DNA from: Podarcis muralis | Lineage: Eukaryota | Length of the DNA stretch: 64,000 nt | Reading direction: 5' to 3' | NCBI RefSeq assembly: GCF_964188315.1 | Contig: NC_135659.1 | Span: 62,248,001 to 62,312,000 of the forward strand | Shown here: piece by piece, positions 39,865 to 64,000 of the stretch | Numbering within the stretch: position 1 is the first letter of the stretch | How the letters are laid out: each line of letters starts with the position of its first letter | Program-made: the position numbers and the translations under genes | The notes under the pieces: model-generated | Database searches by the model: none | The model's input: the letters and a program-made list of their open reading frames with translations, nothing else | Told to the model about the DNA's origin: nothing

Positions 39865-42800
39865 TTGTGCTGGTATATTTTACTGAAAATACTTTAAATA
39901 AAACTTTAAATGTTTCTCATATTTTAAATCTAGTTGATTTATCAACTATCACTTTTTTCAAATAACACTAGTTTCAATAAAACAAGATTTCGACTTGCTA
40001 CATAAGTGTTGAAGCTCAGAAGTGTAGCTCCCTAGGAAGAAGAAGACAGATTGGTGGTAGCATCCCTTCACAAAGCTAAGATGTTGTATATAGTATGATG
40101 ATAGAAGTAGAAGAATAACTGATGGGCGATGAACAGGTTTAATCACTTGAAAAGCTTTATCGTGTGATTTCCCCTGATCCTGCCCTCTAGATACAAATTT
40201 GTCTCTTATATGGCTGGGAATTTCCCAGCAGGACTTTTTCTACCAGTAAGACTGGGGGGGAATTATGCAGATTACTGTATTGAAACTAAAATATAATCAC
40301 ATACACACTCTTTCTCACAGATAGTTGCCCTAAGTTTTCTCACATATCCTTCCATTCTTAATTCAAGATACAGTATCTTTGAACTTTCTTGATGACAGGG
40401 GTGTGCAATATTTTTTCTTTCATTTTCCCACTCATTTTAAGTCTTTCATTTTGTTTCCATTCCTTTCAGTTGCATTCATGTTTTGTGCTTTCCATTTATT
40501 TCAATTAGAGGCTCATCTGGTCATCTGCTGCCTATAACTTTGTTGCATTCCATCCAAATAGCATTATTTTTTCTGGTATACTGTAATTCCCCACAAAGTA
40601 TCAGGCCTGTCAGATTTCAGGTGGGAAGGACAAAATGCCCCAACTTTTTCTGTTTGTCAATTTCATTGCTTTGTCCCTTCCTCTCTTTTTGTAACCGGAA
40701 AGGTAGCTGCACTGGGCTGTTGGCTGGCTGGCTGAAACCCAACTGTGTGCACCAGTTTCTGTTTTTCTCAGGAAATTATAGGTCCATTATACAACTGAAG
40801 ATTTGTACCTAGATTTATTTCACCAACCTCAAATATACATGTATCTGCTGTGGTGGAGAGTAGAGGTACTATGGCCTCTTATCTTCAATCCATTTTGTTG
40901 CCGAAAGTTCCAGGGAGAATGGTTTCTCTGACAGAAACTAATACAACTGGATTGTTTAAACATGGCAAATGTTTCAGACTCACTAGGAGCAAGGATTTTA
41001 TTTCAGCCCTATTCCTGGGCCTGGAGTGAGGGGCATTGTGCAAAAGCAAGCAGCCTTTCTCATGCCAGAGTTTGCAGAGCAGGTGCTAATGACATCCTGT
41101 TTTAGTTTTTGGCTATTAATAGCAGGGGTACAATGTGGATATCTAAAGAACAGTAAAATACGAGGGCTGCCTCCTTGAGATGTGCATGAAAATAGCAAAA
41201 TCAGAAAATGTAAGAAGAACTAGGAAACTCACTAGTGTGTTAAGCTAAGTATATTTTTGGTGTAACATGCTGAAATTTTAGTGTAATGCACTGCTGGATT
41301 TCACAGCCTCATCCTCAAAATACACAAACCATTTTGTTTCCCTGCAAATATTCCTTTCCTGAGGAGGGACTCCCGGTGTCACTAGGCTGCATTTCCAATT
41401 GAGATGGATAGAAGAATATAGCATAAAGGAATTGGCCTACTCTTGTAAGAGTCAGACCTTTTGGTCTAATGGTAATCTATGATTCTCTCTGATTTCTGGG
41501 ACAGTTCTTGTCTCTGCATTTAATATGAGGTCCTATATGGGAATTGAACTTCATACATGCAAAGCTGAATGACCCCTTTCCTGATGGGGGAGGGGGTCTT
41601 GTGCAACAAACAGAGCAGGTGTCCCATCGTATACCCACATCCTGGGTTTATGGAGCGTGGTATTGGCAATGTCATGGTCATCACTAGAGTTTCTTAACAG
41701 AATATTTCAAGTATTCGCTGAAAATTGGAGTTTGATCTCCCCCTCTGTGGTGTGCTTATTTTCAGTAGTTCTAGTCTGATTTTGCCCTTCATACCTGCCA
41801 GTCTTTTTTTTTTCTGTTAGGAGATCTCAAACCATCAAAAATTACTCTCATAACAGCCCAGTGATGTGTGACTCACTGACTCAAAACTGCCTAGATTTTT
41901 TTTTTCGTGTTTCAGCTTTTTGTTCTCTCCCTTCTATAAGGAGGTCAGGCTGACATCCATCTTTCCCCCATGAGGTTTTGTAGGGGAAAGAACCCACGTC
42001 TCCTTTATCGATGTCCAGAGCTATAACTACTAAACAACCATACTAGCTGTCTGCGTATAGTTGAGGAAGATAGGGTACTTTAACCAGCAGTAAGTGGGTT
42101 ATGGAAATTACAGGGTGGGTTAACCAAGTAGCAGGTGAGACGTTAGGATTGCAGGATAGGGAACGTAAATGAAAATTGTGCCCATTAAAAAGAAAGGAAA
42201 AAGCCGCAGGCAAAACTAAACTGTAAAAACCAGACCATTGTATCCCACATAAAGGAAGGCCTGTTTGTCATGTGTGTGGCACACACTCAGTCCATCAAAC
42301 GGAGGATTGCCATTTAAGAAAGCAGTAAAATCAACTCTCTGTAGTTTCTCATTCTTTGTGTGTTTGCTCAGGGACCCGCAGGCTAGCTTTTTGCTGCACT
42401 TTAGGTTACATTAAAAGCAGAAGCTGTTACCCTTACAAGATTGCCACACTTCCTGTTTTCAGAGTGACAGGATGAAATGAGCTGTTAACAAACATTGTCT
42501 TGGTAATCTCTTTGTCAGTATCTACTAAAAAGGAGTAATACTATGATCAGTTCCATTTGCACCGAGATGCTAAAAGAAGGAGCCCTCAGGTTTTTAATGT
42601 GTGCATGAGGAGAGAGGACCCAGCCAACAACATACTGTGTATGCGACAATGACCCAAGTACCTACACAAAGACTAGGGAAGTAGATAGGATTAATGCAGT
42701 GTACCTTTTAACAGTGATATGAAAACAGGCACACTTTTTCTGTTGGGATCAAAGTACAGTAGGTTCATAAGGTCTGGTACGTGTGTACTGAGTTTCATGG

Positions 42801-43058
42801 GTGCTCTGACTGACTGCCCAGCTGGTGGTGGATTTCTTCAGTGACCTCATTTTCCTCATTCCCTCCTTGGTGTGCTTCTTGGAACAAAAGCTGCCCAGGT
42901 TCCATGGTGTGCTTTGAAAAAGCTGCTCTGCCTCTTGTTTTGCTTTGGTGAGCTGCTGCTGGGACTCACTGTGATCAGGAGGAGGAGGAGGAGGCAGGGC
43001 ATGCTGCTGAAATGAAGAGTGTAGTGCAGCCTGCCCTGTTGCAGCCGCCATCTCAGCC

Positions 43059-43870
43059 ATGTGGCTGCAGCCCTGGGAGTTTAGCAGTTGCTACCTGGGG
43101 AAACCCCCTGATTCCAGGAAAGGATCCAAGCCCATGAGGCTGAGCTGGAAAAACCCAACAAGTTCATTAAATTGGTGCTCAAGGAAGGGAAGAACCTCAC
43201 TGATACCGCCACAAATATTTTTACTGTCCAAAGAAAGTTACTCCATTCTGTTTCTGCATCTTCAATAAACATTTGGATGGATGAACTCTCTTAACTTTCT
43301 GAACAATTTAGAAGAAGAACAAGAGATACCGGCCCTTGGTGTTAATGAAAGTTTGCTCAAGTCTCTAGAAAGTTTAAGAAAACAGCAACTTAGAGCCGTA
43401 AAGGCAAAAAACGAGAAGTGTGATAAAAGAAACAGAACTACAGTTCGCCAGTACACAAGCATTTAAATATATTGCCTAAGGAAGAAAAAAACCTTCAGCC
43501 ATTGGTGACAGACTACCAAGTGAAACAAAACCGAAAACATTTTTTACAAGCTGCCCCTGGATTAGGATATGTGTACAAGTTACAAGAGTACAAAAACAAA
43601 ACAAATTTGAATTGAATCTGTTTTGGATGCTCAATTTCTACCATCAGGATTGCAAGCTTGCCGAAGATTTGACCACTACAAAGTGGCTCTGCAGATCGAT
43701 ATCCAGACTACAAGAAATAAAAGAATAAAATTAATTGTTTGGAAGGAGCAGGGTTGGGTGTGGGTGACCTGGAAGTTCTCGCAAACAAAATCAAGCACAG
43801 TCCCCAATAACAGAAAACAGTAAATCAGCCTGCAGTTGAAGGCTACCTTTGTGCACATGGGGAAAGGAAG
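43059..43870 (+). pseudogene. ARHGAP10: Processed pseudogene of ARHGAP10 (GRAF2), BAR domain to start of PH domain
   Basis: Frameshifted segments read MWLQPWEFSSCYL / FQERIQAHEAELEKPNKFIKLVLKEGKNL / NFLNNLEEEQEIPALGVNESLLKSLESLRKQQLRAVK / KHLN..QVKQNRKHF..YVYKLQE / FYHQ / HYKVALQIDIQTTRN / NKIKHSP / EGYL. They are collinear with recalled ARHGAP10 ([94 protein letters not shown]..EGYL). No introns; several stops and frameshifts. Confidence 0.88.
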
Positions 43871-44146
43871 ATGCTTCTTTGTTTTCATGATAAGAGTTTT
43901 TGAACACACCTGCAAAGGCTGCTCAGAGTGACCCACACATCTGATGATTGGCATGGGGAGTCAAGATTACTTTTTATAGTCTGGCAATAAATAGATAAAT
44001 ATACCAAGGCTCTGGAGAATTGTCACTGCTGTTTAAGAATTATTGGCTTTTGATTTTATTTTTGAATTTTTTATCTTCTGTATGCATCATAAGGGTAGGG
44101 TGAAAATAGTCTGAATAAATATATTTTAACAAATTAAAGTTGGGTA

Positions 44147-44510
44147 AACGTAAAGGACCCCTGACAGTTAAGTCTAGTTGCGAATGACTCTGGGGTTGCG
44201 GCGCTCATCTCGCTTTACTGGCCAAGGGAGCCGACTTTTGTCCGCAGACAGTTTTTCTGGGTCATATGGCCAGCATGACTAAGCTGCTTCTGGCGAAACC
44301 AGAGCAGCACACGGAAATGCCGTTTACCTTCCTGCCTCAGCGGTACCTATTTATCTACTTGCACTTCGTTGTGTTTTTGAACTGCTAGGTGGGCAGGAGC
44401 AGGGACCGAGCAACGGGAGCTCATCCCATCGCGGGGATTCGAACCGCTGACCTTCTGATCGGCAAGTCCTAGGCTCAGTGGTTTACACCACAGCGCCACC
44501 CGCGTCCCAC
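44147..44510 (-). mobile_element. Sauria SINE, full length
   Basis: Reverse-complement copy of the 19213 element. TSD ttaaagttgggta at 44134-44146 and 44511-44523. Confidence 0.95.
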
Positions 44511-45361
44511 TTAAAGTTGGGTAGGTGCCTCATAAAAGAGTGAATGAACAATGGGTGTGGAAGCACCCTTGGACTGGAAAAGTTCTCTCATTAAACTCTC
44601 ATTTAAAGTACTTATTGCTGAATTGCTGTGAACAAAAGATCCCCCCCCCATGTATACCTGTTATTTTCTTTTATTTCTTACCATGGGCTATTTGCAGGAT
44701 GATGCTTGGTTGGCAGCTCCCTGATGCTCCAACTCAGAATTATGGTGACATCCTTGCTGTGTGACAGATAAGTTTCCAACACAGGTCAATTCTTTTCTGT
44801 GTATCTTTACATTGTTTGCTGGCAATGGAACAGTTGAACCATCTGTCACTAAGCACGGAGGTGCAATAAGAACAAATTAATTCCACACCGCATGCAAGAT
44901 GTCTTGCTGAATGACCCTCTGGGAAGTGCTAGGACTGCTAAAACTTATATTTGTTCAGTGGCAAAATGTAGTGCTAAATTTAAAATGTCTGAGAAAGGAA
45001 ATGGATTTGTCTGTTAACTGGTCAGTTACTGCCTTGTATTCTGAGGCAAAGCAATCTTGCAAGCATTTTTAAATTGATCTTGGGGATGTATTGGTTAAAA
45101 CCTGCATGAACCCCCCACCCATATTTAATAACAAGGTAACAGCTCTACTTCTTGACACCCCTATGCCTCTTGTTTTCTTTATGTAATCTGCTGTAGTGCT
45201 GTCTAGAATCAAAATGAATTCTTGCTGTTTTATGTTGGGTGTACAATTTATTAAGGATGTGCAAAAGCTTCTAATGATTAGAAGGGCTAAAATTAATGTG
45301 TGCAGCGGAGTGAGGGGAATATGTATATTTATTAGAATGTGTTTTGATACATTGCACATAC

Positions 45362-45500
45362 TAGGAGTGCCAGCTTGGCCCCGCGACCATGGGTGCCTGG
45401 GGCCATGGCCCTGGCACCAAAATTTTTGGGTGCCCAGCCCCTTCATGAGGAATTTTGTGGATGCTCGGGCACCCAGAGCCCCAGGGAGCTGGCACCTCTG
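45362..45500. mobile_element. hAT-like MITE, degraded
   Basis: Imperfect TIR taggagtgccagct/agctggcacctctg. Weak TSD (5 of 8). Confidence 0.55.
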
Positions 45501-46704
45501 CTACGTACCATGACTGTCCACACATATATCTATGAATGTGAGGAGGAACCTGCCATTGTGCTGCTGTTTCCCTCTCCACATGTTCACTTCAGCCTTTTTA
45601 AATGTCTGGAAGAGGCTTATTTTCCGGATAGAATAGGCACTGTGTGACTTGGTGCCTACATAATGCGAAATCAGACCATGAGTTTACAGCAGATTCTGCT
45701 TGTTACTGGTAGAAACTAAGGTTGGGAACCCAAGTATGCCATGAGTGACAGTGTGGAAAGAAGCAGTTCTAGAGAACACACAGTCAAGATGAGGAAATCT
45801 AGAACGTCCATTTTATAGCAGAGCTGCATGACCCAGTCCGCTGCCTGCAGTGTTTATAAAGCTTTCAGCAGCAAATATTGCACTAATTGTGGGGATTATT
45901 TTTCCTTTTTAAAATGGGGACTTACCTACTTGAACAGGAGTTGTGAGGGTTATATTTATAAGCTAATTTGATACTGCTGTGATAAATATAATGGAAATAA
46001 TTTTATAATAGGGAGTCTTATGGGATTGTCACTAAAGTATTTGAATTGGAAGGCAAGGGAATTAATGAGGGAATTGTAACTGAATTCTCCTAAGGAGAGT
46101 AAATGAAGGAAAAGAACTGCTTTGGAGCACTTCATACATGTCTTTTCCTAGTAGAAAAATGTGTCCTTGCAGGCTAGGATAGTGACTGTCCCAGGGCTGT
46201 CCAATGAATTTCATGACAACATAGAGATTTGAACTTGGGCTCTCCGCATTCAGATACCCTAGCCACTAAATCACGTGGCCTTCTGTACAGAAATCTGCCA
46301 CAAAATGCAGGAAATACCAGGAAGGTGGAGATTAGCAGGACAGACCATGTCATTTGTTTTTTCTGTCATATACCAGCATTGAAACAGTTTTAAAAGTCAT
46401 TGCAGACCATGTTAGTTTGAGGTTGGTTTTGTGGGATGTACTGTAATGTAGTTCTGTTGTAGCACATCCACTTAAATGAACAAGTCATAGATGGTAATCT
46501 GTGGTCCAGGAAATTATATGTATATATATATATATATAGAGAGAGAGTGTGTGTGTTTTTATATTGTAATTTTATGTTGTGAACCACCCTGAGATCTACA
46601 GGTGATAATTTTCAGACATGGCCTGAAGAGAACAGGTAAAGGCTGCTTCCAGACAGATGGTTGTTGTGGCATCAGTGCTGCTTGTGTATGCAAGTTTTTG
46701 TACC

Positions 46705-58286: not shown

Positions 58287-58406
58287 AATGTAACAAAACC
58301 GGTGGAAGAAAAAGAAGAAAAACCTAAAGCTCCTACTGTCCAAGAGTTGAAGGAGAAGATTGACAATTACAACTCAAAAGTCAACAACTGCTTGCTGATG
58401 AAGCTG
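58287..58406 (+). CDS. RASSF5: RASSF5 common coding exon
   Basis: Bounded by ttctag and gtatgc. Encodes NVTKPVEEKEEKPKAPTVQELKEKIDNYNSKVNNCLLMKL, similar to human NVCKPVEETQRPPTLQEIKQKIDSYNTREKNCLGMKL. Phase 0/0. Confidence 0.95.
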
Positions 58407-61165: not shown

Positions 61166-61463
61166 AATGATGACGGCACTTACACAGGCTTCATCAAAGT
61201 TCACCTGAAACTTCGCCGGCCTGTGACGGTGCCAGCAGGGATCAGGCCGCAGTCCATCTACGATGCCCTCAAGGAGGTCAACATGGCCAACATGACAGAG
61301 AAGAGAACATCCTTCTACCTGCCACTGGATGCCATCAAACAGTTGCACATCAGCAGCAGCACCACCGTGAGTGAGGTGATCCAAGGACTTCTGAAGAAAT
61401 TTATGGTGGTGGACAACCCACAGAAATTTGCACTTTTCAAGCAGATGCAGAAAGATGGTCAAG
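61166..61463 (+). CDS. RASSF5: RASSF5 exon encoding most of the Ras-association (RA) domain
   Basis: Bounded by catcag and gtgag. Encodes NDDGTYTGFIKVHLKLRRPVTVPAGIRPQSIYDALKEVN...FYLPLDAIKQLHISSSTTVSEVIQGLLKKFMVVDNPQKFALFKQMQKDGQ, near-identical to mammalian RASSF5. 298 nt, ends in phase 1. Confidence 0.97.
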
Positions 61464-62600
61464 GTGAGATAGTGTTCCCTTTTGAGACAGTAATAACAAT
61501 AAAGTGATCAGGATTCAAAGAAGAGCTGCTTGCTTCTTCACTGAGTCCTGCTCTCCACCTTCTCCCACCTGGCCTGGGAGGGCAGGGCCCTGACTCACTC
61601 CAGCAACAAAAGCTGAGGCTGCTGAACAGTTTCTTTAGTTTGGGGTTTGTTTAGGAGTTTTTTTGTTGCTGCAGTTGATACTAAAATTTTTTGTATCTTT
61701 AGATCATATGCTTTATATGGAAGTTGTTCAGTTTGGTTGTGCACTCATTCATGTGTTTCATTTCTTGTTTATAGCTATAATAATTTATTATTTATACCCC
61801 GCCCATCTGGCTGGGCTTCCCCAGCCACTCTGGGCGGCTACATTTGTTATGTTTGTAATTCTGTAAATCTTTTTATGTTGTAAGCTGCCTTAAGCATAGT
61901 TTTAACTGTGGGAAGGCGGCATACAAATAAAATGATGAAGACGATGCTAGCCTGTTTCTATCTCTTTGTTTCAAAACTGTTTATGTTTATAATGGTAAAG
62001 TCCAGAGATGCCTCCCCAGATCTGGTGAGATCCAGGTGTTCTGGGCTGCAACTTCCACTACCCCAACCATTGAGCTGTGTAGTCTAAATTATCTGGAGGA
62101 GAGTCTGGTAAAGGTTGCTCTGTAAGCCCCATTTGTGCTTAAGACTACTGTCCCGTCCCCCCGCCACTTTTACAGAATGGTCCCAGGTAGTTGTAGTAGA
62201 AGGCTATGGAGAAATTATGACTCAAATGGATACAACTGGATGCTTGTAGTTTGTCTTGGAGCCAACTGGAAGTGTTACTAATCTGCCCTATTACAGATTT
62301 CCTTGAGGGATATACTGTAAATGGCTGGCGCTAACCCTCAGTTCTGGAGAATTTAAAATAAATGTTTATGAAATGCTGTAGTGGTTCACAGCTAGCCACT
62401 CCTTTGGGAAAGGGAGGGAAAGAACCGCAAAACATCACTTGGATGCTGTAGCCTTTCTTTCTTTCTTTCTGTCCTCTCCTTGACGTTCTGTGGGCCTTCA
62501 CAACATGGAGAGGTGTGGGAGGGCTTTTTTATAGTTGAAATATGTGCCCTCCTTTTCAAAGGCCTCAGGTCATTCTCTCATGTTTTTGTCCCCTCTGCAG

Positions 62601-62716
62601 TTCTATCCCAGAAGCTCTCGGTAACAGAGTACCCTTTGTACCTCCGGCTACTAGCAGGCCCTGACACAGACATTCTCAGTTTTGTGTTGAAGGAAAACGA
62701 AACAGGGGAAGTTGAG
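62601..62716 (+). CDS. RASSF5: RASSF5 exon encoding the RA domain C-terminus
   Basis: Bounded by ctgcag and gtaaga. Encodes (V)LSQKLSVTEYPLYLRLLAGPDTDILSFVLKENETGEVE. 116 nt, phase compatible with the previous exon. Confidence 0.96.
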
Positions 62717-64000
62717 GTAAGACTGGAAGCTGCTTGCCTTTCAAACCTGCACAAACACGTTCTGCTCTCAGAAAGCAGGCAGTCACATCGCACAAGCAGC
62801 CATTTGCAGTGGGTGGAAAAAGCACACTTCCTGCTCTTGTGGTTCCCTTCTTTGTTACGGATTATTCGGTGCCAGCATTTGAAGATGGAAGGAACAGAGG
62901 CAAATAAAAGGCTCCTTGAGCCAGGAGTCTTTTAAGGCTACATTTGATTCGCCTTTCTTTATTGTTTACACTTGGCTTTCTTTAAAGTTTGACTGTACCT
63001 GTAACAAGTCAGCCTTTTTGCAGAGTTCTGAGCCATAATCCTTAAAATGCTTGTTTTTAAAGTTTTGGAACAGGGAGCATATGGTAAATCTTCAAAAGGT
63101 AGATGAGCTTGGTGCAATATTGCAGATTAGTCATTTGCATCCATAGATTCCCCAAATACATGCTTTCTCCACTCTCACCCTACCCTCACATCATCTGGAT
63201 GCACAGAGACAGCAATATAGCAAACAGATAATTCCACTGTGTTTTTAAACTAGAGGACTGAGCTAAAGTATGGAATTACACTATTTCCTTTTTCTGTTGA
63301 GCACAAGAAACAACTTCAAAATTAAGAATAGGCATGGCTTCCAGAACTCTGCCATAAGCTGCTTTTCAAAATACAGTTTGCTGGCAAAATGGAAGTTCTT
63401 AGAGGAGCAAGGATTCCCCGTAAAGTACACTTGCTTAGAAACCTGATCTGACTGGAAGCCCCAGGTCTTCAACACCTTAAAGAGTTACCTTCTCTCTTTA
63501 TTCTTCCTCTTATGGCAAGAATGGGGAAGCTGTGGCTGTTGTTGGGAGTCCCAACTCCCATCAGTCCCGGACAGCCAGACAATGATCAGGCAATGTTTAT
63601 CTCAAGGCCCACAGGTTCCCCATTTCTACCTGCGGGCATCATGTTCTGTAGACCCAGCTCTTACAGAGCACATTGGTAATACAAAATGTTGAAATTCATG
63701 CACAGAATGGGTTTTTTCTTAGGGTCATAATATCTCAAGAATCTCATGTATTTACACATTTCACTCAATCTCTGGATGGTGACTGTGATTTAAAGGGGTG
63801 CATATATACATTGCTTCTTTTTTACTTTATTTTGCCATGTCTCTAGTTCAAAACATGCCATCACTAAAGCCCCAAACCACTTTTAATACTCCAAAGCTGA
63901 AAAGTGGATTGGCTGGTGTCTTTGAAAGGGAAACAACCATCGCTTGGGATTTTTGCCTTGAACTGCTGTGCTTACAGAATTATTCCCCAACCCATTCTTT

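What the first reader, a model, noticed from the sequence alone, without database searches (positions are those of the whole stretch)
43059..43907. Hidden intronless ARHGAP10/GRAF2 retrocopy inside the RASSF5 intron
Seen: several short ORFs in different frames join into a collinear BAR-domain-to-PH-domain peptide across about 850 contiguous nt. Established: in ARHGAP10 this region is spread over roughly eight or more exons, so the absence of introns indicates retroposition. Residues LQP, AHEAELE, GKNL and LQI.IQ favour ARHGAP10 over ARHGAP26, ARHGAP42 or OPHN1. The heavy decay suggests an old event. Processed pseudogenes are relatively uncommon outside mammals, and this one lies in the same orientation as the host gene.
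Basis: partly seen in the sequence, partly recalled or inferred. Interest (0 to 1): 0.72.

Follow-up and report, generated by a model that had tools for sequence, protein, structure and literature searches.

The report
Dead ARHGAP10 retrocopy in lizard RASSF5 intron
A broken, intron-free copy of the first third of the cell-shape gene ARHGAP10 lies inside an intron of RASSF5 in a wall-lizard genome; it is a real but ordinary, very old processed pseudogene with no sign of activity.

Summary
Window 43059-43867 (+) aligns collinearly to residues 1-278 of squamate ARHGAP10, that is the whole BAR domain, the linker and the first 11 residues of the PH domain. The match needs 6 frameshifts and crosses 3 in-frame stops. 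Identity is 141/291 (about 56% over residues present). The alignment score is 452, against 43±6 for shuffled DNA.

The paralog is ARHGAP10. A tree puts the copy inside the amniote ARHGAP10 clade, with fish ARHGAP10 and ARHGAP26 outside it.

The copy has no room for introns: 809 nt cover 278 codons. The parent's intron 1 site (after residue about 52) and the exon 1 to exon 4 interval known from Xenopus are both crossed without interruption.

It lies on the same strand as RASSF5, in the roughly 37-kb intron between an isoform-C-type first exon (about 21.4 kb) and the next exon (about 58.3 kb).

It is old: at least 0.27 substitutions per site, so on the order of 10^8 years. It is present in 20 sequencing runs from 7 studies of one species. 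Two bulk RNA-seq runs show no reads on it and no splice joints.

It keeps the 5' end but lacks everything after residue 278. No poly(A) tail or target-site duplication is recognisable, so how it was truncated remains open.

Verdict: an ordinary ancient processed pseudogene, of low interest.

The parts
42750..43058 (+). Probable remnant of the ARHGAP10 5' UTR carried in with the copy. The boundary is approximate and inferred.
   Evidence: GC is 0.52, against 0.42 in the flanks. CpG observed/expected is 0.10, with excess TpG (1.58) and CpA (1.45), as expected of a decayed CpG-rich leader. No parent UTR sequence was available to compare.
43059..43867 (+). Decayed ARHGAP10 coding sequence, codons 1-278: start codon, complete BAR domain, linker and the first 11 residues of the PH domain. 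It has 6 frameshifts and 3 in-frame stops.
43868..44133 (.). Unassigned tail. It is either read-through sequence from the parent's intron that ends at an AATAAA (43986 or 44114), or ordinary RASSF5 intron.
   Evidence: No ARHGAP10 homology lies beyond 43867. The junction reads AGGAAGATG, one base short of a splice-donor-like AG|GTAAGA. No A-run is present. GC is 0.33.
44134..44523 (-). Later insertion of a tRNA-derived lizard SINE (44147-44510) with a perfect 13-nt target-site duplication, TTAAAGTTGGGTA. It is not part of the retrocopy.
   Evidence: The duplication lies at 44134-44146 and 44511-44523. Two more copies sit at 26027-26388 and 19213-19556, 84-89% alike.
21362..21481 (+). RASSF5 isoform-C-type first coding exon, the upstream edge of the host intron. 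Coordinates are approximate.
   Evidence: The peptide MTVDNSMSSGYCSLDEDLEDCFF... was found with a probe recalled from memory.
58287..58406 (+). Next RASSF5 exon, the downstream edge of the host intron. Coordinates are approximate.
   Evidence: It matches 14 of 24 residues of the stretch of PDB chain 3DDC_B (RASSF5) printed. The RA-domain exons follow at about 61166-61463 and 62600-62716.

Best explanation
This is an ancient, non-functional processed pseudogene. A spliced ARHGAP10 (GRAF2) mRNA, or its 5' part, was reverse-transcribed and inserted into what is now the large intron of RASSF5, in the sense orientation. LINE machinery was most likely responsible. The insertion carried the leader and codons 1-278. 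It has since decayed neutrally, collecting frameshifts, stops, small indels and CpG loss. A SINE later landed 270 bp downstream. Shown here: the homology, the paralog, the absence of introns, the disabling mutations, the position in RASSF5, and presence in many individuals. Inferred: the LINE-mediated mechanism, the extent of the 5' UTR, the age, and why the 3' two-thirds are missing. For the missing part I favour a source transcript that read into the intron after the exon ending at residue 278 and was polyadenylated there. This is a weak preference, about 0.35. The alternatives are a later deletion or internal priming.
For: Collinear BAR_3 hits in three frames. Frameshift-aware alignment to residues 1-278, score 452 against 43±6 for shuffles. 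tblastn E = 1.6e-20. Top library hits are ARHGAP10. The tree nests the copy within amniote ARHGAP10, on an end branch of 0.89. Intron evidence: 809 nt cover 278 codons. Twelve or more gene-call fragments from genomic contigs of several species match ARHGAP10 up to residue about 52 and then diverge, with GT-type codons, which marks intron 1; the copy runs straight across that point. In Xenopus gap10, RIRAHE lies in exon 1 and FRKEQL in exon 4, and the gene has 23 exons (PMC13495083). Gene-model irregularities suggest further junctions near residues 104, 128, 162, 199 and 278. Host exons lie on both sides on the same strand. The same broken sequence occurs in other individuals. No other ARHGAP10 piece is found elsewhere in the window.
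Against: The two classic hallmarks of LINE-1-type retroposition were not found. There is no poly(A) tract at the 3' end and no target-site duplication. The copy is complete at the 5' end and truncated at the 3' end, the reverse of the usual pattern. At this age both hallmarks would be erased, so their absence is inconclusive. Apart from intron 1, the parent's intron positions rest on a paper about Xenopus and on gene-model irregularities, not on the lizard gene itself.
Confidence: 0.9

Rival explanations
1. The insertion was originally a longer, ordinary retrocopy with a poly(A) tail. A later deletion removed everything after codon 278. In this view the match between the break and a likely exon junction is coincidence.
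For: Old intronic DNA suffers many deletions. The alignment itself shows 25 missing residues and several small gaps. No poly(A) tract is visible.
Against: Homology stops exactly where ARHGAP10 and ARHGAP26 differ by a 2-residue indel, a typical sign of an exon junction. The next bases also resemble a splice donor. Neither point is decisive.
Confidence: 0.3
2. The copy was truncated at birth, without a poly(A) tail. Reverse transcription started internally on the mRNA, or switched template, as in the published class of 'tailless' retropseudogenes.
For: The 5' end is intact, the 3' end is missing and there is no A-tail. Earlier notes of this scan report tailless small-RNA retrocopies in this genome. 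These are leads only.
Against: That class is defined largely by clear target-site duplications, and none is recognisable here. The parent mRNA at residue 278 could not be inspected for a priming site.
Confidence: 0.2
3. The copy is not RNA-derived. It is a DNA-level fragment duplication of ARHGAP10, or a piece captured by a transposon, that later lost its introns.
For: Only the lack of a poly(A) tail and of target-site duplications.
Against: Precise loss of about eight introns from a dead fragment has no known mechanism. The flanking ORFs have no transposon domains. No repeat in the window includes the copy.
Confidence: 0.02
4. The resemblance is due to chance or low complexity.
For: None.
Against: The alignment score lies about 68 standard deviations above shuffles. 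tblastn gives E = 1.6e-20. The Pfam hits are collinear.
Confidence: 0.005

Closest known systems
Processed pseudogenes (retrocopies) of vertebrate protein-coding genes, as catalogued in RCPedia and the 2026 survey of Vertebrate Genomes Project assemblies (bioRxiv 10.64898/2026.06.26.734816)
   Same: It is an intron-free copy of a multi-exon parent. It lies at an unrelated locus, is disabled by frameshifts and stops, sits in an intron of another gene, and has a length (about 0.8-1.1 kb) in the usual range.
   Different: It is complete at the 5' end and truncated at the 3' end. No poly(A) tail or target-site duplication is recognisable. It is much older than most lepidosaur retrocopies, 90.6% of which that survey calls species-specific.
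ARHGAP10 / GRAF2, the parent gene (Podarcis muralis protein P0032; domains BAR 6-248, PH 268-367, RhoGAP 397-545)
   Same: Residues 1-278 are collinear with the copy. About 56% of the residues present are identical. In the tree the copy nests inside amniote ARHGAP10.
   Different: The copy lacks almost all of the PH domain and all of the RhoGAP and SH3 domains. Its reading frame is destroyed.
Tailless retropseudogenes: copies that are intact at the 5' end, truncated at the 3' end and lack poly(A). This comparison rests on my own knowledge and on earlier notes of this scan.
   Same: The 5' end is intact, the 3' part is missing and no A-tail is present.
   Different: The source is an mRNA rather than a small RNA. 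The defining target-site duplication cannot be shown.

Membership tests
Processed pseudogene / retrocopy | Significant homology to the mature mRNA or protein of a parent gene located elsewhere | tested here: met
   Residues 1-278 of ARHGAP10 align with score 452 against 43±6 for shuffles, and tblastn E = 1.6e-20. The locus is RASSF5.
Processed pseudogene / retrocopy | Absence of the parent's introns | tested here: met
   809 nt cover 278 codons. The intron 1 site after residue about 52 is crossed without a break. The exon 1 to exon 4 interval of Xenopus gap10 is also contiguous.
Processed pseudogene / retrocopy | Poly(A) tract at the 3' end | tested here: not met
   No A-run follows 43867 or either AATAAA at 43986 and 44114. 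At 0.27 or more substitutions per site a tail could have been erased, and the copy may be truncated at the 3' end.
Processed pseudogene / retrocopy | Target-site duplication flanking the insertion | tested here: inconclusive
   The repeat search over 42300-44600 gave only chance-level short matches. The insertion boundaries are not defined, and decay is expected to have erased the duplication.
Processed pseudogene / retrocopy | Disabling mutations and no expression (pseudogene rather than retrogene) | tested here: met
   There are 6 frameshifts and 3 stops. Two bulk RNA-seq runs show essentially zero depth and no joints. The tissues are unknown, and only about 12% of each run was read.
ARHGAP10 (GRAF2) orthology group, as opposed to ARHGAP26, ARHGAP42 or OPHN1 | Nests within the ARHGAP10 clade in a tree that includes fish ARHGAP10 and another paralog | tested here: met
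   ARHGAP10 against ARHGAP26 has 100/100 support, and the copy lies inside amniote ARHGAP10 (93/97). The alignment score is 452 against ARHGAP10 and 282 against ARHGAP26. No full-length ARHGAP42 or OPHN1 sequences were obtained. Nesting above the fish-tetrapod split of ARHGAP10 excludes them by inference.
Tailless retropseudogenes | 5'-intact, 3'-truncated copy without an A-tail but with a clear target-site duplication | tested here: inconclusive
   The first three properties are seen. The duplication is not.

The most novel reading that the evidence does not exclude
Two readings remain open. First, the insertion may predate deep squamate splits. Its decay suggests roughly 130-200 million years. 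It carries K254, which is shared by non-gecko squamates, but lacks four states derived on the Podarcis lineage. If so, it would be a clean presence/absence marker for a large squamate clade. Second, its exact stop at a probable exon junction may be a fossil of a prematurely polyadenylated ARHGAP10 transcript that encoded only the BAR domain.
Probability: 0.25. Interest if true: 0.3.

Novelty: new member of a known kind. Interest (0 to 1): 0.12.

Why it matters
It matters little beyond annotation. The locus should be masked or labelled as an ARHGAP10 processed pseudogene, so that gene predictors do not build false BAR-domain exons into RASSF5. If orthologous copies exist in other squamates, it could serve as one rare-genomic-change marker and as a neutral-rate calibration point. 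Nothing suggests a function.

Tried and rejected
- PDB sequence search with two pieces gave no GRAF BAR structure.
- The word-index protein search with a 60-residue piece was blank. Its length filter excludes full-length proteins.
The parent gene's exon-intron map and the intron after residue 278 could therefore not be read.
- Search for a target-site duplication gave only chance-level matches.
- Rfam found nothing in 41000-46000.
- Pfam on nine flanking ORFs found no transposon or viral domains.
- The bacterial promoter/terminator scan is irrelevant to a vertebrate and was ignored.
- Placing the copy within squamates to date it failed: its position inside amniote ARHGAP10 is unresolved, and it falls next to turtles with 91/34 support. 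Single informative sites conflict with each other.
- RNA evidence for exonisation: none. X17 and X19, guessed to be RNA, look like low-pass DNA, with scattered contigs of depth 2-4 in the flanks as well.
- Earlier-findings search for ARHGAP10, GRAF and RASSF5 found nothing.
- Full-length ARHGAP42 and OPHN1 sequences were not obtained, because the best 120 hits were all ARHGAP10.

Full report
**What is there.** Translating 43000-43950 in the three forward frames gives a series of short open pieces. Read in order, they spell the N-terminus of a GRAF-family protein. They begin with an ATG at 43059 (MWLQPWEFSSCYL) and run through FQERIQAHEAELEKPNKFIK, NFLNNLEEEQEIPALGV, NYSSPVHKHLN, DYQVKQNRKHF, FYHQDCKLA, HYKVALQIDIQTTRN and LANKIKHSPQ, to AVEGYLCAHGER. 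Three of the pieces hit Pfam BAR_3 at consecutive profile positions 13-64, 81-127 and 128-182. Each hit is below the gathering score on its own, but together they are collinear.

**Is it more than chance?** A frameshift-aware dynamic-programming alignment against Gekko japonicus ARHGAP10 (P0001) joins 43059-43867 to residues 1-278. It has 141 identities in 291 columns, six frameshifts (near 43098, 43292, 43425, 43589, 43663, 43716) and three in-frame stops (43109, 43718, 43808). Against Podarcis muralis ARHGAP10 (P0032) the same method scores 452. Twenty shuffles of the DNA give 43±6, and the reverse complement gives 58. Plain tblastn gives E = 1.6e-20 within the window and finds no other ARHGAP10 piece anywhere in the 64 kb. 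In P0032 the BAR domain is 6-248, PH is 268-367 and RhoGAP is 397-545. The copy therefore holds the full BAR domain, the linker and only 11 residues of PH. The broken frame is not an assembly artefact. Contigs from two other studies cover 43027-43323 and 43052-43301 with at most one substitution and no gaps.

**Which paralog.**
- The word-index search was blank and the PDB has no GRAF BAR structure. I therefore ran the piece 43112-43291 against the 1.84-billion-protein representative library.
- The best named hits are ARHGAP10 of Gekko, Apodemus and Varanus. ARHGAP26 representatives and one model named oligophrenin-1-like rank lower.
- A search with the Gekko protein returned Podarcis muralis and P. 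raffonei ARHGAP10, among 3512 relatives.
- I built a maximum-likelihood tree of 27 reference sequences plus the read-through with X at the breaks. It separates ARHGAP10 from ARHGAP26 at 100/100 and places the copy inside amniote ARHGAP10 (93/97). Fish ARHGAP10 lies outside.
- Because the copy nests above the fish-tetrapod split of ARHGAP10, ARHGAP42 and OPHN1 are excluded by inference. I could not obtain their full sequences.
- The alignment score against ARHGAP26 is 282, against 452 for ARHGAP10.

**Intronless.**
- The 278 codons occupy 809 nt, which leaves no room for introns.
- Direct evidence for one parental intron comes from 12 or more gene-call fragments predicted on short genomic contigs of several species. 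All match ARHGAP10 up to ...LIAATK(S), residue about 52. They then run into unrelated sequence that begins with codons consistent with a GT donor. The copy is continuous across this point.
- A paper on Xenopus gap10 states that ARHGAP10 has 23 exons. It lists guide RNAs encoding RIRAHE in exon 1 and FRKEQL in exon 4 (PMC13495083). At least three introns therefore fall between residues 26 and 120, and all are absent here.
- Irregularities in gene models hint at further junctions near residues 104, 128, 162, 199 and 278.

**Host gene.** ORFs at 61223-61507 and 62480-62935 match the RA domain of RASSF5/Nore1 (PDB 3DDC_B; E = 3e-40 and 5e-12; Pfam RA). Using peptides printed by that search, plus short probes recalled from memory, I located two more exons on the + strand. 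One lies at about 58287-58406. The other is an isoform-C-type first coding exon at about 21362-21481.

**Boundaries.**
- Upstream, 42750-43058 is GC-rich (0.52, against 0.42 in the flanks). It is almost free of CpG (observed/expected 0.10) and has excess TpG and CpA. This fits a decayed CpG-island leader, but it remains inference.
- Downstream, homology stops at residue 278 (EKR). This is exactly where ARHGAP10 and ARHGAP26 differ by a two-residue indel, which is typical of an exon junction.
- The next bases, AGGAAGATG, are one T short of AG|GTAAGA. AATAAA motifs follow at 43986 and 44114.
- These points suggest, weakly, a source transcript that read into the intron and was polyadenylated there. 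Later deletion or internal priming cannot be excluded.
- No A-tract and no target-site duplication are recognisable.
- A tRNA-derived SINE at 44147-44510 (- strand) has a perfect 13-nt duplication and two more copies in the window, 84-89% alike. It is a later, unrelated insertion.

**Age.**
- The copy's end branch in the tree is 0.89 replacements per residue, while amniote ARHGAP10 BAR domains are 91-98% identical to each other.
- For each aligned codon I counted the fewest base changes that would give the parent's residue. This gives 130 changes in 253 codons, or 0.225 per non-synonymous site (0.27 after Jukes-Cantor correction). It is a lower bound.
- With the rate used for Podarcis muralis, 1.98e-9 per site per year (PMC8760935), this means on the order of 130-200 million years. 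It is a rough extrapolation.
- Single sites are compatible with this but not decisive. The copy has K254, as in all non-gecko squamates, and Y165 and A267, as in Podarcis. It lacks S45, V169, L258 and D248 of Podarcis.
- It is several-fold more diverged than the neighbouring SINE copies.

**Population and expression.** Twenty runs from seven studies, all carrying one species label, hold the stretch. Sixteen of them hold at least half of its sampled words. In two bulk RNA-seq runs, with about 12% of each read, depth over the copy and its flanks is essentially zero. All reads fall on the multi-copy SINE, and no splice joints touch the copy. The tissues are unknown, so this is weak negative evidence.

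**Context and verdict.** A 2026 survey of 244 vertebrate genomes reports that retrocopies dominate lepidosaur pseudogene profiles, and that 90.6% of them are species-specific. Earlier notes of this scan list other retrocopies in this genome, which those notes identify as a wall lizard, Podarcis. The only unusual feature is that the 5' end is complete while the 3' end is missing.

Noticed in passing
window 21362-21481, 58287-58406, 61166-61463, 62600-62716 (+): RASSF5 exons: an isoform-C (RAPL/NORE1B)-type first coding exon, a shared exon and two RA-domain exons. No C1-domain exon was found in the window by a simple pattern search, so the isoform-A exons probably lie upstream of the window or are split.
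   Followed up: partly
window 44134-44523, 26027-26388, 19213-19556: Three copies of a tRNA-derived lizard SINE, 84-89% alike. The copy at 44147-44510 has a perfect 13-nt target-site duplication. RNA-seq reads pile up on the SINE at high depth, with many variants, so they come from other copies in the genome.
   Followed up: partly
window 31328-32234 (-): A 133-residue ORF (31833-32234) looks, from memory, like the C-terminal end of a BovB/RTE-type LINE ORF2. Beside it is a 96-nt direct repeat (31328-31423 and 31808-31903, 92% alike) that starts with TTG repeats. Pfam gave no hit.
   Followed up: no
window 42749-43060 (-): A 103-residue antisense ORF lies over the putative 5' UTR remnant. It has no Pfam hit. 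The window contains 45 ORFs of 90 residues or more, so this is most likely chance.
   Followed up: partly
window 42300-43855: Low-pass contigs of other individuals show a few single-base differences in and around the copy (for example C>T at 43207 and A>G at 43855). This is consistent with neutral polymorphism.
   Followed up: no
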